NCBI GenBank assembly: GCA_002104905.1
Contig: MCFE01000256.1
Location: 48,680 to 112,679 of the forward strand
Length of the DNA stretch: 64,000 nt
Direction of reading: 5' to 3'
From: Basidiobolus meristosporus CBS 931.73
Lineage: Eukaryota > Fungi > Basidiobolomycota
The notes under the pieces are model-generated. The model was not told where the DNA came from and ran no database searches. It saw only the letters and a list, made by a program, of their open reading frames with translations. Numbering within the stretch: position 1 is the first letter of the stretch; every line of letters starts with the position of its first letter. Below are positions 4,485-54,790 of the stretch, one piece after another. The position numbers and the translations under genes are program-made.

Positions 4485-4755
4485 TGAAAAATCTCAGAGT
4501 TGGAATTCATTGGATTTTTAGCTGGTGTTTCTGCTTCATATTTTCATTTGCAATTCTTGGTGGAAGTAATGAGGAGCTGATTACCAAATTTGGTATGAGT
4601 GCCATTTGGCCTAGTCTCCCCCTGGAATGGATGTCTGCTTGTCTGTTGTGAAGCTAGTACCTGAGATACTGAGAGTAGTCACTTTTGGGAAAGTTGGAAT
4701 TCAGCTGATATGGTGATGGTATTCTGCTGGCCTTTTCTTTTTTTCTTAAGGTTAT
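4485..4755 (-). repeat. ~270-bp dispersed repeat, copy 1 (inverted relative to copies at 9630-9897 and 40626-40875)
   Basis: Its reverse complement aligns by eye to the other copies, e.g. CCAGCAGAATACCATCACCATATCAGCTGAATTCCAACTTT, ACAAGCAGACATCC and CTCATTACTTCCACCAA. Confidence 0.85.
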
Positions 4756-9567: not shown

Positions 9568-9629
9568 CATAATACATTGCAAACAAATTTCAGTAATATC
9601 TTTTCCAAAAAAGCTACTGTAGTGCAATA

Positions 9630-9897
9630 CATACCCTAAGAAAGGAATTAAGCACAGACCAGCAGAACACCATCACAATATCTGCTGAATTCCAACTTTG
9701 TCAAAAGCAACTGCTCTCAGTATCACATGTACTAGCTTTACAGCATACAAGCAGACATCCTTTCCACAGAGAGACTAGACCAATTGGTAACTGGCTGCTC
9801 ATTACTTCCACCAAAAATTGCAACAGAAAACATGAAGCAGTTATACCAGCAAAATACCAGATAAAAATTCAATGAACTCAAACTTTGAGATTTTGCA
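9630..9897 (+). repeat. ~270-bp dispersed repeat, copy 2
   Basis: Aligns by eye with the reverse complement of 4485-4755. Confidence 0.85.
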
Positions 9898-27500: not shown

Positions 27501-30500
27501 CCGACAATGCCACATTTGAGAAAAGTGAACGAATCTTCTGGCAAAGGCTCTGTGGGGAGATGTGCAGTGCTCTTGGTTGGCGATGGAAACGCTCGTCTAC
27601 ATTGGTATCTTACGTAGATGCCCTACTGCAACAGCTCCGTGGCGCCCCCATAATTCGTTTCGGGTCGGATTCGGTTTCCAATTGGGCAAAAGTCCAAGAG
27701 GCTGAAACGCTATTAAACATGCTGGTTGCTATCTATGATCGTTCATGGTTGGAGAAACACCGTAGTGAGATACCTTGGTATGACACTTTTCGTACTTTGC
27801 GACTCCACTCTACACGAGCAATTACTGAAGTAGAGACACTATTCAACGAGTGCCGGGACGAAAAGGGAAAAGTAGACAATGTGAAGCGCGAAGGAATCAT
27901 TCTTCATCTCTTAGAGACCTCGCCTTCAGCGATATATCTACAGCAGGTATGGTCACATATAACTAATGAGCGCCAAGACTTGATCAAAGATGAATACCTT
28001 GCTACCTCGCCAATGATCTCTGGCTTGTTCAACCAAGTCAAAGAGAAGGATTTAACGCCGAACCCTTACTTTTTTGTGGTCAACAACCCAGAGAGACTCA
28101 ATCCACACCAGGGTGCATTATACAAGGGCCTCATTCATAGTAACCTGATGGATGAGTCACTGCCATTCGCAGCCCGTCAGTACATGGCTGAGCTGTATGC
28201 CGCACTCCCATCATGTACAATTCAGGATATCGCCAATGTACTCTGTACGCCTGCCCTCCATATAAGACTCGTCGAAGCGATTTTGATGCATTTGCCGAAG
28301 CACAGTGAGCCTGTTAATACTCTACACATCTTGATTGCACCCGTTTACATTGGATCTCATCTTGCCAGAACATCCATCCATGCCATGAAAAATGTTATTG
28401 AATATGCAACAATCGAACAATCGGTTGCCCTCATTCAATCTCTTTTCCCACCAGAAGGTGAGAAGCAAAACAAGATTACAGTACAGAAAGAAGCCGTCCG
28501 GTTAGCGACCTCGAATCTCTCTAGATTTGCTACGACAGAGATGCATCAATTCATTTCACAGCTATGGAAAAGATCCAAGCTGCATACGGACACTCGAATT
28601 GTAATTCTCCAAGCTATGTTAGGTGTTCTTGCAGGATTCCCCAAAGGCAGCGTATCCTCAGAGGGGCAATGGAAGCCGGCGTATGATCTTGCTTGGACCA
28701 TTCTCCAGGATACAGCTAACCGTGCTGACTTGAAGGAGGCAATGGTAGCTTTAGCACTTTTGGCTGTCAAAGCAGGGTCGCCATCGAAAAGCCCTCTCGA
28801 GAAGGCACCTACACGGCCATACATAAGCGGTCCAATACCGTCTCCTTTGTGTGATAAATCTGCCGAGCTGAGCGCAATAGCGGTCGTAACCTTACCATAT
28901 GGGCTCGTTGAGCGTTACACACAGGAGGTCTTGATACCTATGTGTTTCAGCGACGACGTCGAAACGGAGAACCTTTGTGAAATGAAGCGACTAGCAATGG
29001 ATCGACTTGTCTATACCTCTGGTTGGATCACGTGCAGTAATGCTTATGAACTGGCGGTGCAATGGCGCAAACAGGCAGCCAAGCTCAAGTCCAAAAACTC
29101 CAAAAATGCCATCAATTGGTCAGTGTACTTCGATGGGATAGTAGCCGGTTTTAATACCTCTGCAATATCTGACCACTGTCATCAACGCACAAACGGCTCT
29201 ACCGACAGGATCTGGCATGAGCTTGTAGGGATGATCGACGATATGGCCGCGGTGATTGCCGACAAGGCGTGCTCGACCACTGATCGCCAAATAGCAATCA
29301 AGAGAATTGGGCTGCTAAACTTGGAAACCTCGTTAATGCTTCACTCTTACGAGGATCTTGTGAAGACCAACCTCTTTCATGGCCACGATATGGACCTTGT
29401 TCGACCATTCCAGCAGCGGCGATTGGAATCCCTGTACTGGAGTACAATTCTTGACCGAGAGATCACACTACAGCAAAAGATCAATGCCTCCGCTCAGCAT
29501 AAAGATAGTAAGGCCTGCATCCAGCAAGCGCTACGGCTGTTTAGACAGGTGGTTCGCTATTCAACCAGCTATATATCCAAATTTACACAAGCAAAACCGT
29601 GGATCGATAAAGTGATGAGTTTGATCACGAAGAAATTCCCAGATGGATGCAAGCAATTGGCCCATCGCATTATAAGAAATATTGACGTTATAGAGGATGC
29701 TGAGGAAGACATCCACCTAGAAGACTGGATATTTTATGAAGATTGCTGCCTCCACTTGATCAGCACCTTTGGATCCACGTTAGAGCTGGACGATGTAGTG
29801 GAGGTTGTTGGTCGATTTACGAATGCCGAAAGTGACGTTGGCTTCTACGGTCAACACATCCATGTTATGGTCAACAGCCTTTCGGAGGTGGGGACGCGGA
29901 CCATCAATGCATTTGATGCCATTAAAACCCGCGCCTTGCCTGCTCGTCAATTCGATGTAATGAATCAGGTCGACCAACTTTGCCACCATAAACTCACTCC
30001 CCTGGTTGATTGGATTCGAGGGATTCTAACTCGCGCCAAGGATCAGCAATGGAGCATGTATTCGGTAGATACAGTGGCATCCATCGCAATGTTGCTCAAA
30101 ATGCCCTACTTTCTGTATCGCTATGCGCCAACCTTGAGCATCGAGCTATTCCATGCAGCGATGGAGCAAAACGCATCCGACTACTCGAAAACGGGCTATT
30201 CTGCAATGACGAAGCTGACTACAAACCTACTGGAGTTTCTATCTGCTGGCCCGATCCGCAACCACTCGGAGAGGTATGTCTATGAGAAGGCGGCTCAATT
30301 GATACCGTTCAACCATAGAATAGCACCTGTGACTGTGATCTTTATTGAAGCGATGATGCAAAATCGCACCGAGTGTATTGATGTGGCTCCATTCATGAAG
30401 GCCCATGAGCTGCCTTTGAATGTTGTTCAAGGTCAGTTGTTCCCATTCAGAACAGATGCCGGAACCGATGGTGGTGATATGTATGCCACTCGATCGCAAA

Positions 30501-31341
30501 AACAAACCATCGAGCAAATGGAGGAACGATGGGCAGAGCTAATGAACGGATGGGGAGGTTACTTCCAGGAGATAGTCGATGGTACTGTGCTCTGCTATAT
30601 AACCACCTTTTCTATTATGTACCATATTCTCATGTTCGCTATGATTCGATCGTATATCTAGGAATTGCCACTGTCTTTTCTCCCAAGCCCTCGCGAGCAC
30701 TGACTTTGGCGTATGCGCAGCAAGTTCACCGACTTTTACAGCTCTATCCTGGCTTTATCCTTGCTCGCCCGAAACTCTACCTCGACTATCTGCGTGTGAC
30801 GTTAACGGCTCCCCGTACACACTACTGCCCCAAGGATGCGGCGAGAGATATAATTGGTTGTCTTACCATTATTCCGGAACTATATCAGCCTAATCCCAAG
30901 AAAGCTCGAATCTTTGCCTGGGCCCCTCCTTTATCTTTGGGCCTGGACATTGTGGAGCACTTGGCCACCACCGTTCGAGAAGAAGCTGCTCTGGAAGGAG
31001 ATCGAGAAGCGAAGCTGATGGAAGAGGTAGCAGGAAGGGTCTTGAATGATTGGCTGAAAATGATTGTCAACGGCACTGAAGGCCAGTGGCTGCTTAAGGC
31101 TGAACACCCCAAAGAAGTGGTCAAGTTACGCCGACGTGATGAAAGTAGTAAGAACCTGAAGGACGAAGATCTTGAATCCTATGGGGAAATTGACATGGAT
31201 ATCGATTTGGAAGAAGAGGAAGAGGGGCTTGTGCGCCGCTTTGAGAGGCTGAGAGATTTGCTGAACGTCGATGGCTCAGGTTCTCAGCAGTTTGTCATTG
31301 CGCTGAAAGACATCAAAACCCCCACGAACAACAAGCACTAG
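24526..31341 (+). CDS. Large hypothetical protein (~2,166 aa), probably alpha-helical solenoid (ARM/HEAT-like), 5 exons
   Basis: Four long same-strand ORFs join in frame via introns 25135-25197 (GC-AG; alternative donor 25123), 26787-26863, 27006-27100 and 30582-30661; spliced length 6501 nt is divisible by 3. Leu/Ala-rich helical composition; no catalytic motif recognised. Confidence 0.75.
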
Positions 31342-34141: not shown

Positions 34142-37100
34142 ATGGCAGCCCTTGTATCCGCGATGAATTTGTCGCGAGCAGCCACCACAAACGACATACA
34201 CTCCGCACGCCTTTTGCTTGATCTTGGTCATCATCCCAATGAACGCGTGACATGGAACATTAGATTAACTGTCTCCCCAGTGCTATTTATTGAAAGTGAG
34301 GAACGCTGGACCGACTTCAACACCGAACTATACCAATCCATTCCACTGAACATAGCGGTTTTTAGTGGGCACGAGCAGATGGTCGACCTACTTCTTTCTT
34401 GCGGAGCTAATCCAATGCTCAAAGATAGCCTCGGCCGGTAAATTGTCAATTCCATGATGGCCCTTGGAACCTCTCTAACGACAGCTTTCTCTAGGAACGC
34501 CCTAACCTGTGCGATATATGGTGTGGATACTAAAACCCTTACCTTGGAAAATATAACCCAGGCTTCATTTGTACATCCTAGTCATCTGACTATCCTACGC
34601 AAATTAGTTCTCGCTGTAGACAAACCAACGCTTAATGAATCAGACCCGGACCTCAACGGAATCACCCCTCTCTGCCTAGCCAGTTATTTGGGGAAGAGTG
34701 ATGTTGTGTCAGTGCTGATCAAAGAGGGTGGTGCAAATGTCGATGCCACCGATTCGAATGGAGCAACTCCTCTGATGTATGCAGGTACTATACTTCTGAA
34801 ATATCGGACTAGAATGTGGCCAGATGACTCAAGTGGCTCCCTTAATAGCACGCGATGGGCATGAGAATATTGTACAGCTACTTCTTGAATATGGCGCCAA
34901 GGTTGATACGGTTGACTGTAATGCTTGGAGCTCTCTACAATATTCTAGAGCCTATCCAGGGATAACCCGATTGTTAGAGGAGCATCTCCGGAAATCTCGG
35001 CAGATTACTCAGGTATTGGAATCATCTGTATTCAATCCAAATGCTATGAGGATAGTAACAGTCGCTTTCTGTAGAACAATCTTTCGCTGTCGCATCGATT
35101 CACAGGGCTAACAGCGGTCATTTACCCAAATTTTCTTGATAGATTAGCAGCAATCCTCTCTGGCCTGCCATCCTCGATCGAAAATACATCAGCTGACCTT
35201 GCAAACCTTGACAGTAGTGCGGCAAACCACCATATCATTATTCAGGATCTGATGAAAGCCATCAGGCACAACGACCACATAGAGCTCGAAAGCCTCTTGT
35301 TTTCGTCAAATGGATATCGCTCACATCTGTTGGTAAATCACTTTCACCCAAAATCTGGATCTACATTGCTGCACCACGTGGTTAGAGTACGGCCAGTCCC
35401 CTCTTCCGAGAACATTGTACTGCTTTATCAGGCCGGCGCTGATGTTAACGCACAGACCTACGATGGAAGGACAGTTCTACACCACCTATGTCGGCTCAAA
35501 CCCCAGAGTGTCGAGCGGCCTTCATCCGAACCGCAGAGTGCACTTATAATCAATCAGGATAGACAAGCCACATCCATTGACGAGATAGGTATTCAACAAG
35601 TTACGTCCTGTGCAGACTTGCTAATCTGCTTGGGCGCCTTGGTGAACGTCCGGGATAAACTGGGCAATATACCAGTTCATTACGCAGCCCAGATAGAGAA
35701 CGGGTTCGAGCTGGTGCAAATCTTGGTGAAGGCCGGCTCCGATCTTGCCATGCGAAATAATACCGGAAAAACGCCGGCTGACTATGCCACCACCATGGAA
35801 ACGAGAAAAATCCTGTTGGAGGGCAGGCGACCAGTGGACGACTTCAGAGGTAAGCTTATGTGTGAGTGTTATAGAGGGGTGGCATTAACATGTGCACCAA
35901 ACCAGATAATGCGCCGCTCAGTCGCCGAAAACCTCCGGGTCCGATATTAAGCATAAACACTAGACAAAATAGTCTCGCTGAACCCGATATTCATACGAGT
36001 CGGTCGGAAGCACGGACCGCCAAGGATGATAAGAAACATTTCTCCTGGTCGTCGATTATCAGGATCTTGCGAGAGAACAAGAAGAATCCCAGCCCTGCCA
36101 ATTACTCAGGGAGTTCTCGCCCATCCATAGATGGCACTTCTTTGAGGTCCAATCAAACGAATTTGGCCGAGGAAATGTTCGAGCAGATAGGTGGAGGCAG
36201 CATGCAACCAATGGGAATTCCCCGGACGGGGCATGGCCACACTCTTAAATCCCAATACTCCAACTCTTCATCATCCATCTCCATCTTATCCCGATTACGG
36301 AAGGATCGAGTGGTGGATGAGTATCAAGCTTTGGAGCACGCAAACTACTCGGTTGCAACATTCGAAAGTAGAAGCTCGAGCTTATCCTCGTCAAGCACAA
36401 CACCCACTCTGCTTGTTGCCAACTCTGACCAAGAGGACAGGCACTCCATTGTCACAGATGCGTCTTCAGTCACCAGTGAATCCAGTGTTGAATTCTCCAC
36501 ACCAACCAATGATCAAATCCTTATGTCGCGCATCAGGTCAGACATCTCTCTGGCGTCGAGTAGAAACTACGATATCTCGGAATCTGTGCAGCTGAAAGAG
36601 TGTAACCTTGACCAGAAGCTGTATTTCCACGACCAGAGCTCAAAGACCGTCCAATACATGAATCAGTTCGCTAACCCTGGACTCGGCCTTAGCTTACCTC
36701 TGGCCCATACGTTAGGCAGAGTGGACCCTCCGTCTGCCAAAAGTGGTGCGACAGCATTCAAATCGGTAGATTCCCCAGCCTCGGTATCCCAAGTTGGTGC
36801 CAGCATCGGCATGGAGTTCAAAGCACTGGCCCTCGAACTAAGATCAATTGACAATACTATCTCCACCTCCATTGAGGGCTCCTTACAACTCATCGTTGAA
36901 GACCTGCTTTTTTCGCCATCACCACAAGGCAAAGAGGTGCAGAATTCGGAAAGTACTTCGCGGCAGCACTATTCGATTGACTTCCAAAAACTGATCCGCA
37001 TTCAGGACGTGATCAGTCATTTTCACCCCGAGCTTGAGCAGGCTTCTTATCAACTATTCTGTGCTGGACAGGAATATCACCGAGCCATCGAAGCACACAA

Positions 37101-39694
37101 GATATCTATCGAATGCCAGAAAATCGAATGGCTGAATGTGGTGAAGGTACTAGAGAAAGATATTGTGGAAGTGGATGAAATTGACAAGTCCAACCAAGCT
37201 ATCCAACAGGAGATCAATACCATGGAAAGTGAGGTCAAGGGTTTGCTGAGTGAACTTAAGTTGTTTCGAGAAAAGAAACTCTGTCAGATTACCAATAGAG
37301 CGGTATCTGTAACCACAGTGCAAGGGCAGGATTCTCTCCCCTTTGATATAGAACTCGATTTCAGCCTGGCCTTTCCTAATCCATCCTGGGAAGTGATCGG
37401 GAGATTGTCCTCGAAAGTACGCAATCTGGAACGGAAACTCAAAATTCAAAATGAGAGAGAAGAGCAACGTGAGCTTTTAATCCAAGAGTTTGCAAAGTTC
37501 CTGGAGGACAACATCCATGATGCTGAGCGGGACTTGTTGGGTCAGTGCAAAGAAAAGCGCTCCAACACAAGTGAATGTTCCTATGAAGACTCGAAACATC
37601 TTAATTCTAAGGGTGTCGAGGATCCCCTGGTTCAAATTCTTAAACGGCAGATCGACTTCAAGGATGGTCAAATCGTTCAGCTTAAAAAAGTCGTTCACTC
37701 CCTGAAGGAGAAACGGAGCAATGATACTACTGTATCCTCACTCCACCGCAGTACCGGTCACTGTCCGCCCAAAAAGCATATGGGCAGGGGCGAAGTAGCA
37801 CTCTCGGAGGAAAATCAAGCCGAATATTCTCGCCTGCACTCCCAACTTCGAAGTGTTGTTGGCCATTTGAAGGCATTGGAGCTGAATATTAATGACACTG
37901 ACGAAAAAATCCGTCAGATAGCCCTCCATAAACAGCGGATACATGCCCAATCGCTTGCTTCTGGTTCACATTCACCGGATGCATCTGCCGAACTTTCCTG
38001 CGAGAAAAATCCTCAGATTTTGCTGAAGCAGGCCAACAGCCTTTGTATAGAGCACAGCCACTGTATCTCCCAGCGTAGAAAGTTAGAGAAGAAGAAAATG
38101 AACATTCTGCACCGCTTGAACCAAATTCGCCATAGAATCAACGGCATAACTCGTGGAAGAAGCAACATCGATCAAGAGAGCCCCAGAGCAACCTTATATA
38201 AGCAGCATAAAAATTCACCCTCACAAATAACCGAATCCAAACTCTCAATTCAGTCTACGGATTCGCTCATCTTCAATTTGGAAATTGTCCTCGCCCAGCA
38301 CCTTCGACTGCTTAGCTCTGGCTTAGTAACAAGTGGCCTCCAGGTTGACTCCATCAAGGAGAGATTGCCTTCGCTTGTGGAACAAGTAAGGACGTTGATT
38401 GACGGCTTAGATTCAATGAAGAAGAATGTGGATGTGCTAAGCACTCTAGTTGACAAAACGTTTACCAGTCGCAAGACCCTGCTTTATTGTTATGGAGAAA
38501 TTGGAATCGAACTAAACCGGATTGTAAGCACCGCATACATTCATAAAATCAAGCGATCCAGCCCTGGCAATAGCACTCTCTCGGAGATGCCAGTATTTTT
38601 GCCAAAACTAGATGACTGGATACAGAATTATAAGGGGAACAACCTCCCTAGCGATGTATTAAATCAAGAAGTCGAAAACCTTGATTCGATGTATTCCCGT
38701 TTTGCTGACTCTTTTGAGGCTCTGTACGCGAATATGGCCCAACTCCAAGGTGTTCATGCACAGATCAAAGAGGTGCTGTTGCGTGAGGAGCAACTGACAA
38801 GCGAGAGGGGAATGAAGAGCGAGAGTGGACTTTCAAGCGCTTCGCAAACTCTACGCAAAATTCGAGATCAATGGAATGGTTGGAAAATCGAGCCATCGAC
38901 CTGCTTAGATCTTGACAACCAAGACTCGTCAATCTCTGATGATTCATTATCAATCAAAGGAAGGTGTCCATATACACAGAAACAAGCACGACATGACCCA
39001 AAAACTCATAGAAAGTCGTATAATGCTCGCGGAAAGCCTCGAAGAACTTTTTCGCTATCCCGGGAATCCAAAAAAATCCATAGAGAGGTTCGTTTCTTCC
39101 ATGACATATATTTGAAGCATCCGATACACTAACTACTTGCCGCAGAAATCGCGCCTATCATGTCCAGAACCTCTAGCACTGATTGAGCAAAACCCTCGGA
39201 TGATGCTGACTTTAGAAAGCGTATCGGAACACAGCAAGATATCCTCGCTCAAGGGATCACATTGCATAAATTCACTCAACTTGTATGAGGCATCGGACGT
39301 TTGTTCTGCCAGTAGACATCCTGCCGGGGCTGATAGGCCTTCACGAGAGAATCAACTACTACGAAAGATAACCTCAACTTCATCACCACAAAGGATATCC
39401 TCTACCAATAGCTGTCGCTTCTTACTGCGTTCCACTGGTATCACGAGAGACAGTGATCAAAAGCCGAGCAGTCGCTCAGATGCACTACGGAAAAAACTTT
39501 GTAAACTCTCTCAATTACGCAAAGAAATGAAAATCTTGGAGCGGCTCAATGTCTCACATGAGTCATCTGACAACGCTTCTGAGAAGCGGCGTCGGCATCA
39601 AGCAATGTTGGGTAAAAAACGGGAATACATCGTTCGTCTGAAAGATTTAACTAAGGAGTGTCACTCGGTATTGAGGCCGCCTAATAGCACATAA
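34142..39694 (+). CDS. Ankyrin-repeat protein with long coiled-coil C-terminus (~1,750 aa), 6 exons
   Basis: Ankyrin consensus segments (PLNIAVFSGHEQMVDLLLSCGANP; GITPLCLASYLGKSDVVSVLIKEGGANVD; GRTVLHHLC; GNIPVHYAA) link across GT-AG introns. The last intron, 39088-39145 (GTTCGT..CTAAC..CGCAG), joins ORF 35890 to ORF 39137 in phase 0. Confidence 0.85.
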
Positions 39695-39769
39695 ACATAA
39701 TAATAAACATATTAGACTTTTCGATAGAGTTTCTGGCTTTCACAAGTACCTACACCATAGTTTACTTTC

Positions 39770-40018
39770 AAGCTGTATTGTTAAGTCTTACTATCTTACG
39801 TCATAATGTCCTAACCCTATCCCTAACGCATACTCTACCCCCTGTCACGTTACACACCATTACCACCTTTATCTTCTCCGGTTCCATCAGTCTTAACATC
39901 CTAAACACATTTTTCTTCGGCAACACTTCCAATTTTGACTCTTTTAACGTCTTTAACACTCTCCCCAGTATATCTCTGTTCTTCTCCAAAAAGTCTTCCC
40001 CCCCCCTTTTATCATCAT
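39770..40018 (-). pseudogene. Uracil-DNA glycosylase-like remnant (family-1 N-terminal segment), catalytic motif absent
   Basis: LPKKNVFRMLRLMEPEKIKVVMV (39855-39923) matches by eye the family-1 UDG pattern [24 protein letters not shown], but GQDPY is replaced by CNVTG. Linking it to the nearby ATG and a downstream GIGL segment needs frameshifts at G homopolymers. Confidence 0.45.
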
Positions 40019-40352
40019 GGATCCTCCACCTACCGAATCTTCTATCCTTGAAGACGCATATACCCAACTTTACATCCAAACTCTTATCGATGATGATAAT
40101 ACCTCCGTTCTTGTTAAACATAATATCATTTCTGCCGACGAACAAAATCAAGACCTTCCTTATTTACTAAATTCCGTCAAAAAATACCTTTCCGCCAAAG
40201 TACCCAAATCTACATCCACTAACAGCAACACCCTCTGCAAATACTGCGGCGCCAACAACGTCCTTGTCCTTGAATCTCAACTCCGCTCTGCCGATGAAGG
40301 TAGCAACTTGGTCCACGAATGTCCCGATTGCCACAAAAGTTGGACCATATAA
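40017..40352 (+). CDS. TFIIS/RPA12-type C-terminal zinc-ribbon protein (111 aa), intronless, no N-terminal ribbon
   Basis: CKYC...QLRSADEG...CPDC is the RNA-cleavage-stimulating ribbon with its acidic DE hairpin. The first ~73 aa contain no Cys. Confidence 0.85.
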   Translation: MDPPPTESSILEDAYTQLYIQTLIDDDNTSVLVKHNIISADEQNQDLPYLLNSVKKYLSAKVPKSTSTNSNTLCKYCGANNVLVLESQLRSADEGSNLVHECPDCHKSWTI

Positions 40353-40625
40353 ATTATCAAATCTTTTTCTCCTTTTTTTGAAAATCCTTTCCTATTACCT
40401 TATCTTTTACCCCAACCCCCGTCCATTCTGGCTTTGTCGCTGAAAGTTCCGTCTCTCACGACCTCTACAGTATCCGGATGGAAAAGGTCGAACTCCTTTC
40501 CCAAGTTTATCATGATGCCGTCTCTGACATCGCGGTCCACTCCTCCCTAACGTGAAACAATAAATATAGCCAGAAGCAGTATATTGGACCATGTAGGCAC
40601 TATTCCAAGGCAAAATATGGAGCCT

Positions 40626-40875
40626 ACCCTAAGAAAAAAATCGAGAAAAGGCCAGCAGAATACTGCCATAATATCAGCTTAATTCCAAGTTTCTCAAAAC
40701 TTGCCACTCTCAATATATCAGGTTCTAGCTATTGGGCAGACGAGCGGACATATTTTCCAGGAGGGGACTAGGTCAACTGGCATTCATACCAAACTTGGTA
40801 ATCAGCTGCTCACTACTTCCCTCAAAAATTGCAACTGGTAATTTGAAGGAAAAACACCAGCTGAATTCCAGCTAA
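40626..40875 (+). repeat. ~270-bp dispersed repeat, copy 3
   Basis: Shares CCCTAAG..AAAAGGCCAGCAGAATAC..ATATCAGCT.AATTCCAA and CATACCAAACTTGGTAATCAGC with the other copies. Confidence 0.8.
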
Positions 40876-41013
40876 ATACCACCGACCCTAAACAGCGCGA
40901 CGCAACACAGCCCAACGTAGCGGGAATGGTAGCAGCTCTGCGTCTAGGAAGCAGACCTTTTGCACCGGACGGGGGCCAAACTACAGACAGCGCAGCAAAA
41001 AGCACCCGACACG

Positions 41014-41237
41014 ACACACCAAATATGTTTAAGAAGGTCGCAAAAAGATGTGTGCAAAGTTTGGGGCTGTTTGAACAACTATGAAATATTTCATGTTCTG
41101 GGTACCTGATGTTTTGTTGAAAATATTCGCAGTAAATCCCAACAAGGGATTTGGGCAGAATTCTCTAAGATTTGTAGACTGTGATATAAGTGACTACATT
41201 AGGTGAATATATAGGTGTAAATACGAAATATACAACA
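41014..41237 (-). mobile_element. Truncated LTR of the copia family
   Basis: ATGTGTGCAAAGTTTGGGGCTGTTTG..CATGTTCTGGGTACCTG..AAATCCCAACAAGG..TACAACA match part of the LTR. Confidence 0.85.
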
Positions 41238-41363
41238 GATCCTGACTTTACTACCAAGGGATGATATTAAAATATTTATACTAGTCATTCTATAGCAAGA
41301 ATAATAAAAAGGGAAAGAAACAAAAATAACACTACCCATAATATTACTCAGTATGGTTTCAAT

Positions 41364-41634
41364 TGTTGCTAGACTTATGGAGAAGCTGGAAATGGTTGGG
41401 AGAACTAGTATATTATATGGTTATTACTTACTAATTTATTGAATGTAAAAGTGGTATCAACACTTTTACAAGGATATGGCAGAACATATATGCAGGGTAT
41501 ACTAAAAAATGCCCTTGGTGCATTTGTGCACAATGTTCTTGGTAACTGTGGCAGGAAACAATAGAGTTCTTTAATCAGGATCAAAGTGACCAATTCAGTG
41601 TAAATGTTTAAGCGGAAGTACAAAACTCACAATA
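41364..41634 (-). mobile_element. Degraded, internally deleted solo LTR
   Basis: TGTTG start, TTTATTGAATGTAAAAGT block and terminal CACAATA resembling the LTR end. Confidence 0.6.
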
Positions 41635-44714: not shown

Positions 44715-47183
44715 CTATCCAAATATAACACGGAGGACCAGGTAGCTCAGACACCCGATGAATTTGATACAAGAGAGGAATGCAACTGCCCAGAAGATGA
44801 ATGTCAAATAACCTTGACCATCCGTACTGCCTGAAGTGACACCGATCAACAAGATCGCATTGGTAATGATCCAGAGCAAGACCACCCGAGTACGGAACAG
44901 CTTGTAATAATCCTCCTTCTGGGTGGAGGCATCCTCCTCGTGCTTCTTGGGTTCCGGGCGAATTCTTAGTTCACTCTCCAGTCGGTCATAGATAGCATTG
45001 ATGTCCGTTTTCTCAGTGGGAACTTCGACCTCGGCGACTTCAACACCTTGGTTATTGGTGGTTGACGTGACGTTGCCCTGGGCTGGCTGGATTTCTATCT
45101 TGTTATCGCCCTTGGTGCCCCAGGAAACATCGTGGGTGTTGCAGAATGCATACACCATCAAGATATTGACAAAGGAAGGGAAGATGAAAATATACTGGAT
45201 AAAGCTAGTAAACATGTGCCATGGCTCGAAGTACAAGAAGGAGGAGGCAAAGTACAGTCCATACGTGGAGGCAAGCGCAATGAAAATATTCATACTATTC
45301 GAGGTAAATGGATGGGCCTTGAGAGCTTCGATTGTGGCTGCGTCGGTGAAGTAGATAACAAGGTTGAAGATGATCGTATATGTCATGACGAGCATCACGA
45401 AGGCGAAGAGGTAGACGCAAATGAGATAGATGGATCGAGAGCCTTGAGGACGGTTACCAAGAGCAAGAATAAACTGTACAATTAATCCAATGCAGAAAAG
45501 ATCGCGAACAGCTGGGTAGATAAACCATGAGGCACCAAAAAACGGGTCCGGTTTGGAGGGATCACGGCCTTTGATGATATTACCAGCCGTGTCTCTGGGA
45601 ATTGAGTTGTAGCACAGGAAGTAGAAGGTGAGGAAGAAGTTGCCAATCGAGAACCAACTGAATAGAAGCGATATCGAGTTGTAGATAAATTCGATCAAGA
45701 AGAGGAATTTTCGGCCACTTCCGTGGTTCGTTTTGAAGATTTGGAACCAGTGAACCATGGCGAAGAACGCGGCGAACAGGGATCCGTTCAACCAACGACG
45801 TCTCTGTGAAATGAACTCCGCCCAGGAATCGGGAGCATCAGTCTCGGCCTTCGCGGATTTAACATACTTGAGCACCCATTTACAGTTCTTCTTTGCGACT
45901 AGCTCGAAACAGAGGATACGATCTTCAGCAAGGTACATATTTGCTTCGAAAATACCGCCAGTGGCATTCGCACCATGCATTGTTTCACCCTTGAAATAGG
46001 AAGCAAGTGGTCCCACACCAGGAGCAGTATTTTTCAGAGCCGCGTATCTGTATGCGGAGAAGGCACCAGGGAGCACACTGATATATCCAAATACACTCTC
46101 CAGTGGTTTATCGAGGATGTTACTCATTTTGTACTCGAAGTTCTGGGCGGCAATCAATGGATTTAACAGGTTTTTCCAACCACGGCCAAGTTCAACACAA
46201 ATTTCTCCACATGCACCTCCCAAGTTGGGGTCACGGTCGAAGGCCTTCCAAAGATGGTAGATTGAAGTGCCACTGGGTTTGGTTCCAACATCGAGAAGGA
46301 CGCACACGTTGGGATTAAGGAGTGGAGCAAAGGCATTGAAAAACCAACGATGCGAGTTCAATTTCTTGGCGTTCTTCTCCTTCAAACAGAATAGAATCTG
46401 AATGGGATCCATGTTCTTCTCCTTGATACTATGAACTTTGAAGTCGCTGTCAACATACTTTTGAGTAGAGAATTCATAAATATGTGCAGTGACGGGCTTT
46501 CCATTTACAGATCCTTGGTTGATGCCGTCCTGGTAAACACCCATCAAACCAAGAACTTGAAGGACACGGGGATGGATCTTGGTACGACCATCCGACACAA
46601 TGCACACCACTGCTTTTTGCCAACCATTGTTTCCCCAAACACGAGATTTGGAACGGTTACAGAGGTGGTGAATATTCTTCAGAACTCCGGAAAACGTTTT
46701 AATGAAGAGCTCCTCATCTTCGTTGTACATGGTCATGACAATGAAGAGTTCGGTAGACCTTCCATAGAGTGCTGGTCTCAATGTATAACGCTCTTTCAAG
46801 AAATTGTTGGGGTCACAAGTAGCGGCAGTGTAGCGCATGTGAGTAAATTCTTCGTGGTCAGTGAATGGCACGTTTTGAAGGACTTTATCCGGAACAGGGC
46901 AGTCAAGGACCAAGTTACCCGAAATGAGCTCAACATAGCGCATATTTTGCTTTCTTTCCTCCATGAATTGCTGGTATCTTCTGGCATTAGGCGGGGGAGC
47001 AGTTCGGTTATCATAAAGATCTTCAATGGTGGAGGAGGCATGAGCTAATGGAGGAACTCCCCCCTCTGTGGACATGTGTCGAAGATTGATATCCTCTTCA
47101 TCATGAAAACTGTCGGTGGAAGGCATTGGAGAGCCGTATTGGCTTGGGACAGTGTAAGCCGGGTTATTGAAAGGGTCAGACAT
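44715..47183 (-). CDS. chs: Chitin synthase, division 1 (class I/II/III type), intronless, 822 aa
   Basis: Motifs [45 protein letters not shown] and QRRRW, followed by multiple TM segments. Confidence 0.97.
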
Positions 47184-49689
47184 CAAGAGGGTTATTTAAG
47201 AATGATGCAACAGAAAACTTTATACGAGGAAGGGGTGAAAGTCGGATGTGTTCAATATTTAGTAAGTGCGCTTCTAAAGAAAATAATAAGATAGACAAAG
47301 GGATTAAGAAGTGAAGGGTAAACATACAAGGCACACTTTCGAAGCAATAAATAACTCCCACCAACGAGAAAGGCCGCAGTAGATTGGGAGGATAAGATCA
47401 GAGGAATCAAGGATCCGAAGCCAAATATATCCTGAAACAGATGAGATTGAATCTCATTGGCACCTTCAGCCATAGCTCATCAAGGACCCAGTTTCTAACG
47501 AGACCAAGTGTAAATTTAGCCCAACCCCACCAACAATCCCAGCCTTTTCCTAACTGTGTAGATAATAATATCATTAATTATACTTTTGGAGTACAAAACA
47601 TCATCCGATGATCATTGAGTAGACTAATTTGGGTATTCAATGAATGTAAATGTAGTAAATACCGGCTCATATCTCGATATTGATTTAAGACCAGACACGG
47701 AGTTTAAAGCTCATCTATGTGGGCTTCGCCATCATTAATATGCACCATTACCAAGCCAAGGAAACTGTATCCAGTTGACATAGAACATCCTCTGCTGAGA
47801 TACCGCCAATCTTTACCCCTGTGACCGCCGACAAAGCCCATTCCCACTTGAGCCAATCTTTTCGATTGATTTATTTAACTATATTTAGCGGATTCAAAGC
47901 CTAATAGGTTTTGGCGTTTCCAAATGCCAAGAATGTTGAGTTTTAGGCTTTTCATCAAAGATAGCAAAATCGGAAATTGTGAGCAGTGCCAAGCCTATCG
48001 TAACCAGATGGTTGGAACATTCTATTCCAGAATATACGCTACTTTGATTTACCGTGTTGCTTGGCTTGCTGGTGACATACCATTGGAGGCAACAAATAGG
48101 AAGTATCTAGTCTCAGTGATTTCGGCCAAATAAATATATATGAAGGGTGGCTACTTTAACGGCTCATTCCCAGAACATTCAATATACTGCTCTTGCTCAC
48201 CATAGACGCACGATGAGGCTCATCATTTCAGAAGGGTTCCAAAGCAGAGGCAATTAACGCTCAGTATAAGCAATTGGGCTTGTCGATCATGATTATCTTC
48301 AGCCCACAAGAAAAATATGGCCGGAAACGGGTTTGTTGCTAATAGGGATCCAGCACTGGGCTTATTCCGTCAGCTTTTCATGGAATCTTTGCTACATTCT
48401 CAGCTGAAATTGCTTGTGCTTATAAGAAGTTGGCTTGGTTATTTCCTAATCAATTCAAGACATGCATGTAGCGATCGCAATGTCGCACATACTACACGAG
48501 GTGTGATGAGTACCAGCTAATTGCATGCAGCTCTATCTTTGTTGGTCATGATTGTCATACATATTGCTTCTGACGGTGCTGATTGTTGAATTGAAGCTTA
48601 CCATTTGTTTTGATTTGGAATGTTTTCATTTAATGAGGGCTTACATGGCCATGGGGCCACAAATGGCTTCGATCCTAACAAAGCAATTGATTGCCTCGTA
48701 GTCATTGGTCTGCCTTCACAGCCCTGGATTTTGATGGTAAATGTTTGACGAAGTCATACTGAGCCGAAACTGGGTGTTCGAAGCTCCGCGTGTATCACTG
48801 TGGTCTGCTGTCTGATATTTTTATGTGCAGATAAGCTCCTTTCAAGTTGACTAACATGTGTATTTCTTATTGACAGACTTTGTATACTTCACCATCCTTA
48901 TATTTTTTTCGCTATTGCCTAATGCGTTGGGGTGGAGTTTATGGTTACTCCCATGTGATGTTACCTGGTCTATCAATTTCATAGCGTTGCACCAGATTCT
49001 GGGCAATATTAACATACTTAGTGAGGAGTGCTGTCGAGGTCAAATTGTTGCTGGGCTTCGAAATACACTTTCGTTACGTCAAAATCCAACTTATCTACTT
49101 TACCAGAAACAAGATTAGGGTGGCTATAGAGTGTAGTTAAACATGTTCCTATTGTTGCCTATTAACTTGAAATATAAGTAGGTATTATCAGTGTGTATGA
49201 CAAAAGCTGGCAAGGTGTGTTAGCTCTACTTAGGCCCATATTGTATCATAATGAAAGGAATATATACAAAACAATATGTGTTTGGTTTGTGTAGGCAAAA
49301 GGCAGATATCTTAGAGTATTTACAGATAGTTGGCATACTAACTGCAATTCAGCTTATGACTTTCACATCAATATGCTTAAAACTAAAAGATACTGATGTG
49401 CAATGTTTTGCAAGAAGATGTAAAATATTGCTGTTGATTTGGTAAACTACAAGGCTTGCATAATATTCTTAGGCTGATTTGGATGCAAATTTGATATTCA
49501 CATTAAAATATTTTATTCACTTAGTTACTGGGAGCATAGTTCATATGCTGTATTTGTTCACGAGATTGATTAAGAATATTTTTACTAATGCAAACAATAC
49601 ACTGAGCATAGATACCCTGGGAGTACACCAAAGGCCAAAAATCTGCACAATTGCATTTGAAATTCTCTTTAATATAGTGCTTATACTTA

Positions 49690-50038: not shown

Positions 50039-50430
50039 ACTTTGAAAAGACTGGCTAAAGACTTTATAATGTTGTAAGAGTCTTGGAGATATTGGAAGTG
50101 ATTGGGAGGACAAGTAGATTATGTGGTTTTCACTTAATGATTTATTGAATGTAAAAGTAGTATTTATACTTTTACATGGTCTTGGCATTACAAACACGTA
50201 GAATAGGTTAAGGAAGGTCCCAAGAACATGTGTGCAAAGTTTGGGGCTGTTTGGACAACTTTGAGAATTTTCATGTTCTGGGTACCTGGTATTTTGGTGA
50301 AAATATTCTAAGTAAATCCCGACAAGGAATTTGGTCAGTATTCTCTAGGATTTGAAGATGATGATCTAAGTGACTAAGTTAGGTGAATATTTAGGTGGAA
50401 AATACGAATTTTTACAACACTCCCACTCAG

Positions 50431-53400
50431 CTAAATGTTCATACTGACTAGTCCTAATTTTGACCTAAGATATTCAAACTTGTCTCTGGCTAATGGTTTG
50501 GTAAATATGTCTGCAATCATTTCATCTGTAGGACAGTAAACTAAGCTAACTAAGTTATTCTCTATAGCTTCACGTATGAAATGATGTCTAATATCTATGT
50601 GCTTGGTTCTGGCATGAAAAGTTGGATTTCTACCTAATTGTATACATCCTTGATTATCTTGAAATAAAGTAATAGGCGTTTTTTGACATAGGCCTAAATC
50701 TGTAAAGAGCTTTCTTAACCACATTGCTTCTTTTGTAGCTTCACAGGCTGCCATATACTCTGCCTCTGTAGTAGAAAGTGCTACGGTTGGTTGCTTTCTT
50801 GAATTCCATGAAATGGCTCCTTTACAGTAAAGAAAGGTGTATCCTGTGGTGGATCTTCTGTCTTCTAAATTTCGTCCCCAATCAGCATCAGAGTATCCCA
50901 CAAGATCCTGTTCTGAATCCTTATAAGTGTATCTTAAACAGATATCAGCAGTTCCTTTTAGGTATCTAAAAATCCGCTTAACTGCTGCAATATGATCAGA
51001 TCCATAATTCTGATTATGTTGGCTGGCAACTCCCACTGAATATGAGATATCTGGACGTGTTCCAAGCATGATATACATCAGACTGCCGACCATAGATTGA
51101 TAAGGAAAGTCAGGGCTTTCAGATGGCACCAAGCTCTCTTGATTTGGTTGAGTTTTGACCAAGTTAAGGTTTGTCTCCATTGGGGTAGCTGCCGGTTTAC
51201 AGTCTTCCATTTTGTACTTCTTTAGTATATCTTGAATATACTTGGATTGGCTTAGGGTAATAGTCTGGGTACTTCTGTCTATGGAGAACTTAATCCCTAA
51301 GTAGTAACTAAGTTCTCCTAGATCGGACATCTTGAACTCCTTAGATAGGCTGGATTTAGTCTCTTCCAATGTTTCTAGGTTATTGGCGGCTATAATAAGA
51401 TCATCCACATATAGAGCTAATAGAACTGGATTTGCTCTATCTGGCTTATAGTATATACTATAGTCAGCATTACTCCTTTTGAAACTCAAAGATTCCAAAT
51501 AAGAATCTATCTTGCAATTCCAGGCTCTCGGTGATTGTTTGAGACCATATAGTGACTTTTTAAGCTTGCAGACCAAATGGGGGTTATCTTGGTCAACAAA
51601 ACCATCAGGCTGGTCCATATACACGTCCTCATCAAGTTCTCCATTCAAAAATGCAGTTTTTACATCCATTTGATGAATAAAAAACTTATATTTGGCTGCA
51701 ATAGCCAATATTAATCTGATGGAATTAAACTTGGCTACCGGTGCAAAGGTCGCAGTATAGTCAAGTCCTTTTGTTTGAGAGTATCCTTTGGCTACAAGTC
51801 TTGCTTTGTACCTTTCAATTGTACCATCAGCCTTGTATTTTGTCTTGAAGACCCATCTGCATCCAATTGATTTTCGGTTGATTGGTAATTTGACTAAGTC
51901 CCAAGTTTGATTTTCCATCAGGGCCTGATATTCCTCAGTCATTGCAGATCTCCAAAACTTTGTCTGAGGGCTATTTAGGGCCTCTTTTACAGTCTGGGGT
52001 TCATCAACATGGACTGAATAGGCATAGGCCAAGTTTGTACCCTCATTGATATAGTAATTTGGGCTATTTCTTGTCCGATTGGATCTCCGGGCATTTGATA
52101 CTGGAATGATCACTTCTGGGATATTCCTGGGCACTGATTCTGGCTGAACCACGGTTGTAGAGTCCTCTGGAGTGAAAAAATTTTCATTGTTTTGCTCTGA
52201 TTCAATCCTGACAATTGGTGGACTTGAGATCAAATTTTCGTCATCATCTGATGTCATTTTTTGTGAAAATTTTGAATTTTCATCAAACAACACATCCCTG
52301 GACTTGATCAGCTTCTTTGCTTCGGTATTGTAGAGTCTGTATGCCTTACTCTCATTGCAGTAGCCCAAAAATATGCATTTTACACTTTTTGGCTCAAATT
52401 TTGACTGATTTCCGGCCAGTTTTTTGGCATATGCTGTACACCCAAATATTCTTAGATGTTCTGCACTTGGTCTGTATCCATACCATGCTTCAAATGGAGT
52501 AGAATCACAAAGTATTCTGTTATAACTCCTATTTTTAAGATATACAGCAGTGGCAACTGATTCCGCCCAAAAATCATAGGATAATTTTTGATCATGGATC
52601 ATAGATCTTGCCATATCAATTATTGATCTGTTAGCTCGTTCTGCTACTCCATTTTGCTGTGGGGAGTATGGTACAGTAGTCTCTTGCTTTATCCCATGAA
52701 TTTTGCAGAAGTGGATGAAGAGTTTTGAGGTATATTCTCCACCATTGTCAGAGCGTATTTTCTTGATTTTTTCACCAGTTTCTCTCTCCACCATGGCTTT
52801 GAACTCCCTGAGCTTAGACAGAGCTTCTTCCTTTCTCTCCATGAAGTAGACCCATGTGTATCTTGTATAATCATCAATAAAAGTGATTAAATACTTCATC
52901 CCGCCTAAGGATAAATTTTGCATAGGTCCACACAGATCTGAGTGAATTAGATCTAATTTTTTCTTAGTTTTGATTAACCCAGAGCTCTTGAACGGTTGTC
53001 TGGCTTGTTTCCCATATATGCAGGCTTCACAGTGCTCCAAAATAGCTGGGGGATCAATTTTCACTCCAGAAATTAGCTGATCTTTGATCATTTTATGCAA
53101 ATAATCAAAATTGATGTGTCCAAATCTCCTGTGCCAAAGCATTGGTGTTTCTTCATTTAAGTTACTTATATTGGCTTCCAGATATGATGGAATATAAGTC
53201 AACTTGTATAGATTCTGATCTCTGATGCCCGAAGCAATATGGGCACCATTTTGATCAGTGATCCTACATCCAGAATTGTCAAAACTGAAACTGAGTCCTT
53301 CTGCTGTGGCCTTGCTTACAGAGAGTAGGTTCTTGGCTATTTCTGGTACATAGAGTACTTCTTTAAAGGTCAGTGTATGGCTTCCTTCACTGCTTCTAAG

Positions 53401-54402: not shown

Positions 54403-54406
54403 AACC
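54394..54406 (-). promoter_or_regulatory. Primer-binding site for a half tRNA-iMet
   Basis: GGTTATGAGCCC directly follows the 5' LTR and is complementary to the tRNA-iMet anticodon arm GGGCUCAUAACC. The same site is at 9206-9218 and 58425-58437. Confidence 0.9.
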
Positions 54407-54790
54407 TGTTGTAAGAGTCTTGGAGATATTGGAAGTGATTGGGAGGACAAGTAGATTATGTGGTTTTCACTTAATGATTTATTGAATGTAAAAGTAGTAT
54501 TTATACTTTTACATGGTCTTGGCATTACAAACACGTAGAATAGGTTAAGGAAGGTCCCAAGAACATGTGTGCAAAGTTTGGGGCTGTTTGGACAACTTTG
54601 AGAATTTTCATGTTCTGGGTACCTGGTATTTTGGTGAAAATATTCTAAGTAAATCCCAACAAGGAATTTGGTCAGTATTCTCTAGGATTTGAAGATGATG
54701 ATCTAAGTGACTAAGTTAGGTGAATATTTAGGTGGAAAATACGAATTTTTACAACATATAAGAGTACATTTACTACTTGTACATCACTAT

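What the first reader, a model, noticed from the sequence alone, without database searches (positions are those of the whole stretch)
39740..40560. Compositionally alien ~0.8-kb island: candidate endogenous large-DNA-virus relic
Seen: the + strand here is almost devoid of G whichever strand codes. In the + strand ribbon gene only 3 of 111 codons end in G (ATG, TGG, one TTG). In the - strand UDG-like frame 26 of 48 core codons end in G and only 2 in C. The skew is therefore strand-linked rather than transcription-linked, unlike the flanking host genes. The two frames are intronless, head-to-head, and their start codons overlap (CATCATG at 40013-40019). A third skewed open segment follows (about 40380-40554). 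Established: TFIIS-like factors and UDG are common Nucleocytoviricota genes, and large-DNA-virus insertions have been reported in early-diverging fungal genomes. Inference: this is a fragment of an integrated virus or linear virus-like element.
Basis: partly seen in the sequence, partly recalled or inferred. Interest (0 to 1): 0.82.

Follow-up and report, generated by a model that had tools for sequence, protein, structure and literature searches.

The report
G-poor relic of foreign DNA element
A 0.85-kb stretch of this fungal (Basidiobolus) contig is a broken-off piece of a larger, unusual DNA element, probably viral. Its genes on both strands avoid the base G on one and the same strand, and its only known relative lies in a sister species.

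Summary
Window 39680-40429 has 9.7% G against a 21% mean, the strongest single-base depletion in the 64 kb. The 111-codon + ORF is a real TFIIS-type zinc-ribbon gene with 3 G-ending codons. Alone it matches nothing, but it aligns (61% identity, E 4e-18) with the start of an intact 226-aa ORF on a 1.9-kb Basidiobolus ranarum contig. That ORF is a divergent family-1 uracil-DNA glycosylase that has lost two key residues. The third segment is the first 36 codons of a large unknown gene on the same contig. In that fuller copy, silent sites of oppositely oriented genes carry 0-6% G on the same strand, so the skew is strand-linked. The window therefore holds an internal fragment: one intact gene between two truncated ones, beside retrotransposon debris. 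Viral origin is the likeliest reading, since giant-virus relics have been reported in Basidiobolus, but it is unproven. I found no hallmark gene, no viral or metagenomic relative, and no function for gene 3. The cause of the skew is unknown.

The parts
39680..40429 (.). Core of the G-depleted island (maximal-scoring segment): 9.7% G on the + strand, GC skew -0.51
39695..39812 (.). G-poor stretch between the stop of the neighbouring host ORF (39694) and the UDG-like remnant. It has no detectable homology to the relative; it may be decayed element sequence.
   Evidence: no blastn or tblastn match
39813..40018 (-). Broken remnant of a divergent family-1 uracil-DNA glycosylase (UNG-like) gene. It corresponds to residues 4-69 of the 226-aa B. 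ranarum ORF plus the conserved start codons. Breaks: 1 frameshift and 1 truncation that removes about 70% of the gene. There is also 1 in-frame one-codon deletion.
   Evidence: tblastn 61% identity, E 3.8e-18; the relative's ORF is UNG-like; the window frame alone has no significant match
40017..40352 (+). Intact 111-codon gene. Residues 74-110 form a TFIIS-type zinc ribbon with the acidic hairpin (invariant Q88, R90, D93, E94 and four Cys). Residues 1-73 have no N-terminal zinc ribbon. Its start codon overlaps the UDG-like start (CATCATG, 40013-40019).
   Evidence: Pfam PF01096 E 3.8e-11; PDB RPA12 7aoc_I E 3.3e-5; 59% identity to the B. ranarum copy, omega 0.18; alignment A2
40353..40426 (+). 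Pyrimidine-rich spacer between the ribbon gene and gene 3, partly conserved with the relative
40427..40554 (+). Broken 5' remnant of gene 3, a large gene of unknown function (more than 345 codons in B. ranarum). 36 homologous codons remain. Breaks: 1 disabling substitution, 1 premature stop, 1 truncation of the rest.
   Evidence: tblastn 78% identity, E 5.5e-13; translations; gene 3 continues on L003
40625..40876 (.). Neighbour, not part of the element: a dispersed host repeat, with copies at 4517-4752 (inverted) and 9632-9865
41022..41530 (.). Neighbour: fragments of the Copia-type LTR (41022-41240 and 41357-41530)

Best explanation
Shown: window 39.7-40.55 kb is an internal fragment of a larger DNA element that is so far seen only in Basidiobolus. 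The fuller copy is a 1.9-kb B. ranarum contig (L002), with a further piece on L003. That copy carries three genes:
- on one strand, an intact but highly divergent UNG-family gene, probably catalytically dead;
- head-to-head with it and sharing overlapping start codons, a small protein whose C-terminus is a TFIIS-type ribbon with the acidic hairpin that stimulates transcript cleavage in RNA polymerases;
- then a large gene of unknown function.

All three avoid G on the same DNA strand at silent sites whichever strand codes. The bias therefore belongs to the replicon's strands and not to transcription or translation.

Shown: in the window only the ribbon gene is whole, and both neighbours are cut off. 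The piece lies between a host ORF and retrotransposon debris.

Inferred: the element is most likely an endogenised piece of a large DNA virus (NCLDV-like) or a related episome. Its strands were replicated or exposed asymmetrically, and this fixed the skew before integration. The two remnants are inert. The ribbon ORF may or may not still be expressed.
For: - Island statistics.
- Ribbon domain.
- An exhaustive HMMER search of 1.84 billion representatives finds one real relative only: P0002, B. ranarum, 59% identity, E 1.4e-33.
- L002 is G-poor over its whole 1914 nt (11% G; 4-7% in the first 400 nt).
- The L002 minus ORF matches UNG over its full length: PDB 3tr7 E 1.1e-10, NCBIfam NF003592 E 3.8e-20, phrog_12143 E 8.7e-19.
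- All three genes are represented in the window, with both outer ones truncated.
- Four-fold sites, expressed on the element's + strand: UDG(-) A .06, C .65, G .00, T .29; ribbon G .02; gene 3 G .04-.06. Host genes have G .15-.23.
- Lys/Glu/Gln codons: A-ending 86 against G-ending 3 in the + genes, and 9 against 30 in the minus gene. Host genes are about 1:1.
- Purifying selection between the two copies: omega 0.18-0.20 with saturated silent sites.
- At least two copies or branches exist in B. ranarum.
- The genes are compact, lack introns and have overlapping divergent starts, conserved in both species.
- NCLDV relics near retrotransposons are published for B. meristosporus (PMC7017919).
- Some weak full-length or ribbon relatives lie on NCLDV-like metagenome contigs.
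Against: - No virus hallmark gene is in the window or on L002/L003.
- No relative was found in IMG/VR or in JGI metagenomes.
- The ribbon is as close to cellular RPA12 (P0006, 7aoc_I) as to viral ribbons.
- The UNG-like protein scores best against bacterial UNG (44 bits), against 37 bits for the mimivirus enzyme. That difference is not meaningful.
- Gene 3 gave nothing in Pfam, PHROGs, NCBIfam or PDB, and the single-sequence AlphaFold models had pLDDT 35.
- Skew of this kind and strength is not a known trait of giant viruses (my own knowledge). Its A/T component does not fit simple cytosine deamination of an exposed strand.
- I could not look at the rest of either Basidiobolus genome.
Confidence: 0.5

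Rival explanations
1. It is a non-viral mobile or extrachromosomal element, such as a linear or circular plasmid or a DNA transposon of a kind not yet described. Its one-directional replication produces the strand bias, and a fragment of it has been left in the chromosome.
For: - The skew is strand-linked and independent of gene orientation.
- There are at least two copies or branches on short contigs in B. ranarum.
- The window holds only a fragment, in a transposon-rich neighbourhood.
- Viral hallmark genes and viral relatives are absent.
Against: - No transposase, integrase, replication-initiator or terminal repeat was seen on the 0.85 + 1.9 + 0.4 kb available.
- A TFIIS-type transcript-cleavage factor implies an own or modified multisubunit RNA polymerase. 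By established knowledge this is typical of large DNA viruses rather than of transposons.
- Only one ribbon copy is annotated in the window's genome.
Confidence: 0.2
2. It is a decayed paralogue of a Basidiobolus-specific host gene cluster (UNG paralogue, RPA12-like factor, orphan gene). The odd composition would come from a local chromosomal mutational context.
For: - Relatives are known only from Basidiobolus.
- NCBI names the B. ranarum protein rpa12.
- The best solved-structure match is cellular RPA12.
- Host genes in this window can also lack introns, e.g. chitin synthase.
- CpG observed/expected is not an outlier against neighbouring host sequence.
Against: - The island's G content is the extreme of the window and ends sharply at both homology limits.
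- Oppositely oriented genes show mirrored codon usage, which no host translational preference can give.
- The RPA12-defining N-terminal ribbon is absent.
- The UNG-like protein lies far below the family cut-offs (72.7 against 162 bits) and has lost key residues.
- Overlapping divergent start codons leave no room for ordinary promoters.
Confidence: 0.2
3. Only the + strand ribbon gene is real. On this view the G-poverty is a property of one transcription unit (pyrimidine-rich UTRs plus C/T-ending codons), and the minus frame is a chance shadow ORF.
For: - The window's minus ORF alone has no Pfam hit, and its PDB matches are at E > 0.5.
- G-poor sequence is nearly stop-free on the + strand.
- The host prefers C/T-ending codons mildly (chitin synthase).
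Against: - The minus frame aligns at 61% identity, E 3.8e-18, with an intact 226-aa ORF that matches UNG over its full length.
- On the C-poor strand a 226-codon ORF has about a 1e-9 chance of being open (my estimate from the composition).
- Lys/Glu/Gln codons never end in G in the + genes, although the host uses them about 1:1.
Confidence: 0.03
4. It is an assembly chimera or contamination.
For: Composition changes sharply at both ends, and the B. ranarum relatives sit on very short contigs.
Against: - The island lies inside a 112,679-bp contig with fungal genes and fungal retroelements on both sides.
- A diverged copy (69% nucleotide identity) occurs in an independent assembly of a congener.
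- The element genes here are broken, as expected for an old insertion and not for a contaminant.
Confidence: 0.03

Closest known systems
Endogenous NCLDV elements of fungi ('fundsalphaviruses', related to Pithovirus; Gong, Zhang & Han 2020, PMC7017919)
   Same: Reported in B. meristosporus and B. heterosporus, often beside retrotransposon sequences and often with broken genes. TFIIS-like factors and UDG are common NCLDV functions (the latter from established knowledge).
   Different: Those elements were defined by PolB, with D5, an SNF2 helicase, a SAM methyltransferase and RNA polymerase subunits. None of these is present here. No sequence link to them could be tested, and the paper does not mention a strand skew (the word 'skew' occurs 0 times).
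TFIIS / RPA12 / RPC11 / RPB9 transcript-cleavage zinc ribbons (Pfam PF01096)
   Same: A C-terminal four-cysteine ribbon with the conserved Q-x-R-x-x-D-E hairpin. This predicts insertion into an RNA polymerase pore to stimulate RNA cleavage.
   Different: It lacks the N-terminal RPB9-type ribbon of RPA12/RPC11/RPB9 and lacks TFIIS domains I and II. Its N-terminal 73 residues resemble only the B. ranarum copy and, faintly, small ribbon proteins from metagenomes.
Family-1 uracil-DNA glycosylase (UNG). As a functional analogy, the poxvirus UDG that also serves as a DNA polymerase processivity subunit (established knowledge).
   Same: The B. ranarum ORF aligns with UNG over its full length (residues 15-224 against 28-225 of 3tr7_A), and the loop histidine is kept.
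   Different: In the alignment the catalytic Asp of the water-activating loop is Ala and the uracil-recognising Asn is Ser. Scores lie far below the curated cut-offs. The poxvirus enzyme did not come back as a hit, so any structural, non-catalytic role is inference only.
Strand-asymmetric replicons such as vertebrate mitochondrial DNA (established knowledge)
   Same: G is nearly absent from four-fold sites on one strand, whichever strand a gene lies on.
   Different: Here the G-poor strand is rich in C and T and low in A, whereas the mitochondrial light strand is rich in A and C. The spectrum is therefore not the classical deamination of a displaced strand.

Membership tests
RPA12 (RNA polymerase I subunit A12.2), the name NCBI gives the B. 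ranarum relative | N-terminal RPB9-type zinc ribbon (two Cys pairs; Pfam PF02150) | tested here: not met
   No Cys pair in residues 1-73, and no PF02150 hit at E <= 1. In alignment A2 the cellular RPA12 P0006 and P0016 carry it, but the window protein does not.
RPA12 / TFIIS ribbon superfamily | C-terminal TFIIS-type ribbon with an acidic hairpin | tested here: met
   PF01096 E 3.8e-11, 43.1 bits against a cut-off of 21. C74, C77, Q88, R90, D93, E94, C102 and C105 are invariant in A2.
TFIIS proper | Domains I (TFIIS N-terminal) and II (central) before the ribbon | tested here: not met
   Only the ribbon is matched in Pfam, and the protein has just 111 aa.
Family-1 UNG | Alignment with UNG over the whole fold | tested here: met
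   Met for the B. ranarum ORF: 3tr7_A E 1.1e-10, NF003592 E 3.8e-20 over positions 7-220 of 225. The window keeps only residues 4-69.
Family-1 UNG | Score above the curated family cut-off | tested here: not met
   NCBIfam 72.7 bits against 162; TIGR00628 68.4 against 185.75; Pfam UDG 15.3 against 24.3.
Family-1 UNG | Catalytic Asp of the water-activating loop and the uracil-specific Asn | tested here: not met
   In the alignment these positions read Ala and Ser in the B. ranarum ORF. The His of the Leu-intercalation loop is kept. The alignment is of a very divergent protein, so a one-residue shift cannot be excluded.
Endogenous NCLDV element | Linkage to hallmark genes (major capsid protein, PolB, A32 ATPase, D5 primase-helicase, VLTF3, RNA polymerase subunits) | tested here: not met
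   None among the window ORFs scanned or on L002/L003. Gene 3 shows no similarity to the AEP primase of L007. The rest of the genome could not be searched.
Endogenous NCLDV element | Genes nest among NCLDV homologues in phylogenies | not tested
   The 40-residue ribbon is too short. UNG comparators could not be gathered, because the word search gave none and the exhaustive search was already spent on the ribbon.
Strand-displacement or unidirectionally replicated replicon | Silent-site skew that follows the DNA strand and not gene orientation | tested here: met
Strand-displacement or unidirectionally replicated replicon | Terminal repeats, a terminal protein with protein-primed PolB, or a defined origin where the skew switches | not testable with these tools
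   Only about 3 kb of the element is available. No informative repeats were found in it.

The most novel reading that the evidence does not exclude
The fragment and its B. ranarum counterpart represent an undescribed lineage of DNA virus or episome of Basidiobolus. One strand of its genome is kept almost free of G at every unconstrained site. This would imply an unusual, strongly asymmetric replication or damage/repair regime. The inactivated UNG homologue might be linked to it, retained as a structural DNA-binding subunit rather than as a repair enzyme.
Probability: 0.3. Interest if true: 0.8.

Novelty: new variant of a known kind. Interest (0 to 1): 0.6.

Why it matters
Very little is known about DNA viruses and virus-like episomes of fungi. 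For Basidiobolus the only record is PolB-centred giant-virus relics.

This element adds a gene set not described in that report: a degenerate UNG, a minimal TFIIS-ribbon factor and a large orphan gene.

It also has a compositional signature, near-total avoidance of G on one strand at silent sites of genes in both orientations. That signature is easy to scan for. It could serve as a marker to find the rest of the element in fungal genomes, and it points to an asymmetric replication or mutation process not yet described in fungi.

The work also corrects a database annotation: the B. ranarum 'rpa12' model fuses the ribbon gene with the antisense of an unannotated UNG-like gene.

Tried and rejected
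- My first working idea was that only the + gene is real and that the G-poverty is a transcript or codon-bias effect. I dropped it once the B. ranarum contig showed an intact UNG homologue on the other strand.
- G-to-A hypermutation or RIP-like decay: rejected because A is not raised (28%) and C is raised (30%).
- CpG observed/expected as a mark of foreignness: the island (1.08) is not an outlier against adjacent host sequence.
- pN/pS to decide which strand codes in the overlap: uninformative. The + frame that shares third positions with the UNG frame scores the same (0.31) and is stop-free by construction.
- Gene 3 as a D5-like primase-helicase: a hunch from memory. It is not supported by Pfam at E <= 10, PHROGs, NCBIfam, PDB, or comparison with the L007 primase. 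Both AlphaFold runs were unusable, with pLDDT 35.
- Word-based protein searches: the ribbon found only itself, the UNG-like ORF found none, and gene 3 found only B. ranarum.
- IMG/VR (3 scans) and JGI metagenomes (2 scans) found none.
- P0003-P0005 in the exhaustive search are low-complexity matches, not ribbons.
- No tRNA, Rfam family, terminal repeat or shared flank motif was found near the island.
- Papers naming the assembly accession: none found. The tools give only the accession GCA_002104905.1. I believe it is B. meristosporus CBS 931.73, but that is from memory.

Full report
**Context**

The window is the last 64 kb of NCBI contig MCFE01000256.1 (112,679 bp; assembly GCA_002104905.1). 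It is fungal. It carries a chitin synthase gene (44715-47186, minus strand), ankyrin and C2H2 genes, HeH and PEN-2 genes, several Copia-type LTR retrotransposon copies and a Gypsy-type piece. The only close relative of the finding is from Basidiobolus ranarum. From memory, the accession is B. meristosporus CBS 931.73.

**The observation**

- A maximal-scoring-segment scan puts the G-poor island at 39680-40429: 750 nt with 73 G, or 9.7% against a window mean of 21.1%.
- Its score of 33.3 compares with 19.3 for the next best depletion of any base in the window, and with at most 12.7 in 100 permutations.
- The missing G is replaced by C (30%) and T (32%). A is unchanged at 28%.
- The + ORF 40017-40352 has 3 G-ending codons out of 111. 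G is normal at codon position 1 (26%) and almost absent at position 3 (3%).
- CATCATG lies at 40013-40019.
- The island has no other copy in the window.

**The + gene**

Residues 74-110 are a TFIIS-type zinc ribbon (PF01096, E 3.8e-11). The best solved relative is fission-yeast RPA12 (7aoc_I, E 3.3e-5). The four cysteines and the Q-R-D-E hairpin positions are invariant in an alignment with weak relatives. There is no N-terminal ribbon, so it is not a canonical RPA12.

The word search found only the protein itself. Because the claim then rested on absence of relatives, I spent the exhaustive HMMER search on it. Among 1.84 billion representatives there is one true relative, P0002 (59% identity, E 1.4e-33). 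The rest are domain-level ribbon matches at E > 1e-6 or low-complexity hits.

P0002 is B. ranarum KAK9759425.1, named 'rpa12', on a 1914-bp contig (L002).

**The relative contig explains the island**

L002 is G-poor from end to end: 11% overall and 4-7% in its first 400 nt. Window 39859-40527 aligns with L002 654-1357 at 69% identity.

*The minus-strand gene.* On L002's minus strand there is an intact 226-codon ORF (134-814) that nobody annotated. It matches family-1 uracil-DNA glycosylases over their whole length:
- Coxiella UNG 3tr7_A, E 1.1e-10
- NCBIfam NF003592, E 3.8e-20
- phrog_12143, E 8.7e-19

It lies far below the curated cut-offs. In the printed alignment the catalytic Asp and the uracil-recognising Asn are replaced, while the loop His is kept. 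I therefore read it as a probably inactive UNG derivative.

The window's minus frame has no significant match of its own. It does align with residues 4-69 of this ORF at 61% identity, E 3.8e-18.

*Gene 3.* Downstream of the ribbon gene, L002 carries the start of a third + strand gene, with 220 codons before the contig ends. Window 40427-40534 matches its residues 2-37 at 78% identity. Gene 3 goes on for at least 125 more codons on a second B. ranarum contig, L003. L003 overlaps L002 by 93 nt (98.9% identity), but its upstream 686 nt are unrelated. B. ranarum therefore has at least two copies or an assembly branch.

**State of the window copy**

Nothing else of the element is present in the 64 kb.
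- The ribbon gene is intact.
- The UNG-like remnant has one frameshift and one truncation that removes about 70% of the gene. It also has one in-frame single-codon deletion.
- The gene-3 remnant has one disabling substitution, one premature stop and one truncation of everything beyond 36 codons.

Between the two species' copies, silent sites are saturated (pS 0.64-0.75) and replacement sites are conserved. Omega is 0.18 for the ribbon and 0.20 for the UNG part, and pN is 0.20 for gene 3. Most of the divergence therefore accumulated while all three genes were under selection, and the truncations are comparatively recent.

**The skew is strand-linked**

Four-fold degenerate sites, expressed on the element's + strand:

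| Gene | A | C | G | T |
|---|---|---|---|---|
| UNG-like (coded on the minus strand) | .06 | .65 | .00 | .29 |
| Ribbon (L002) | .16 | .56 | .02 | .26 |
| Gene 3 (L002 / L003) | .13 / .09 | .40 / .39 | .06 / .04 | .41 / .48 |
| Window ribbon gene | .10 | .46 | .00 | .44 |
| Four host genes | – | – | .15-.23 | – |

Two-fold codons:

| Genes | Lys/Glu/Gln, A-ending vs G-ending | Asn/Asp/His/Tyr/Phe/Cys, C-ending vs T-ending |
|---|---|---|
| + strand element genes | 86 vs 3 | about equal |
| Minus-strand UNG-like gene | 9 vs 30 | 10 vs 32 |
| Host genes | close to 1:1 | close to 1:1 |

One translation apparatus cannot favour both patterns. The bias belongs to the DNA strand.

This also explains a database error. 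Third positions on the + strand are pyrimidines, so the + frame that shares third positions with the UNG frame cannot contain stops. It was fused to the ribbon gene in the 204-aa NCBI model. pN/pS cannot separate the two frames (0.31 in both), and only homology does.

**What the element is**

Features that favour a virus-like replicon:
- a compact layout without introns;
- divergent genes whose start codons overlap in both species, leaving no room for ordinary promoters;
- an own transcript-cleavage factor;
- a repair or replication-type gene;
- a foreign, strand-specific composition;
- several copies on short contigs in one species and a truncated insert in a transposon-rich spot in the other.

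Endogenous giant-virus elements ('fundsalphaviruses') have been reported in B. meristosporus and B. heterosporus, sometimes beside retrotransposons (PMC7017919). Some weak relatives of the ribbon protein lie on metagenome contigs with NCLDV-type gene sets. One lies next to an AEP/PriCT primase on an AT-rich contig of another assembly.

Points against, or still open:
- There is no hallmark gene anywhere in what I could read.
- There is no relative in IMG/VR or in JGI metagenomes.
- The ribbon is equally near cellular RPA12.
- Gene 3 is unidentifiable.
- I could not search the remainder of either Basidiobolus genome.

I put about 0.5 on a viral or virus-like episomal origin, about 0.2 on another kind of mobile element, and about 0.2 on a decayed lineage-specific host cluster.

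**Mechanism of the skew**

This part is inference. The equilibrium composition (C > T > A >> G on one strand) points to a long-standing asymmetry in how the two strands are copied or exposed, as in replicons copied in one direction.

It is not G-to-A hypermutation, and it is not the classical deamination pattern of mitochondrial DNA, because A is low and C is high on the G-poor strand. Loss of cytosine from the complementary strand with a strong transversion component would fit, but I could not test direction with two copies.

Whether the degenerate UNG is connected with this is speculation.

The species name, the poxvirus analogy and the statement that giant viruses lack such skew rest on my own knowledge.

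While reasoning I at one point located a frame change and a point change in the two remnants.

Noticed in passing
L002:546-1178 (+) against L002:134-814 (-): The NCBI model KAK9759425.1 ('rpa12', 204 aa) appears mis-annotated. Its first ~82 residues are the antisense of an unannotated, intact UNG-like ORF. That + frame is stop-free only because its third positions are pyrimidines.
   Followed up: yes
window 50070-54738; also 4984-9570 and 55.6-59.7 kb: A Copia-type LTR retrotransposon with an intact 1367-aa polyprotein, plus an older copy and partial inverted copies. Its LTRs are themselves about 10% G on the sense strand (GC skew about 0.4). The element is strongly CpG-depleted (observed/expected 0.24, against about 0.8 in host genes).
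   Followed up: partly
window 40625-40876, 4517-4752, 9632-9865: A ~250-nt dispersed repeat (69-80% identity) abuts the island on the right. It also flanks the older Copia copy on both sides, in opposite orientations.
   Followed up: no
window 25348-30661 and 35890-39694: Very long + strand ORFs (549, 1215, 1080 and 185 aa) have no Pfam match. The 1080-aa ORF just left of the island is not among the genes listed for the locus.
   Followed up: no
L007:1-1899 (GCA_041156785.1, JBFPEN010004450.1): A 79% A+T, 1.9-kb contig of another assembly has a 141-aa TFIIS-ribbon gene lying divergently next to an AEP_C962R + PriCT_2 primase gene. It looks like an NCLDV-like fragment. It has no strand skew and is unrelated to gene 3.
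   Followed up: partly
L003:1-686: The sequence upstream of the gene-3 continuation in the second B. ranarum contig is A+T-rich, holds no ORF and is unrelated to L002. This may be a second truncated copy, an insertion or an assembly branch.
   Followed up: no
L002:6-19 and 56-69: An exact 14-nt direct repeat lies downstream of the UNG-like stop codon, in the most G-poor part of the contig (3.8% G). It is absent from the window.
   Followed up: partly
window 60889-63894: A Gypsy-type reverse transcriptase / RNase H / integrase ORF pair at the end of the contig.
   Followed up: no
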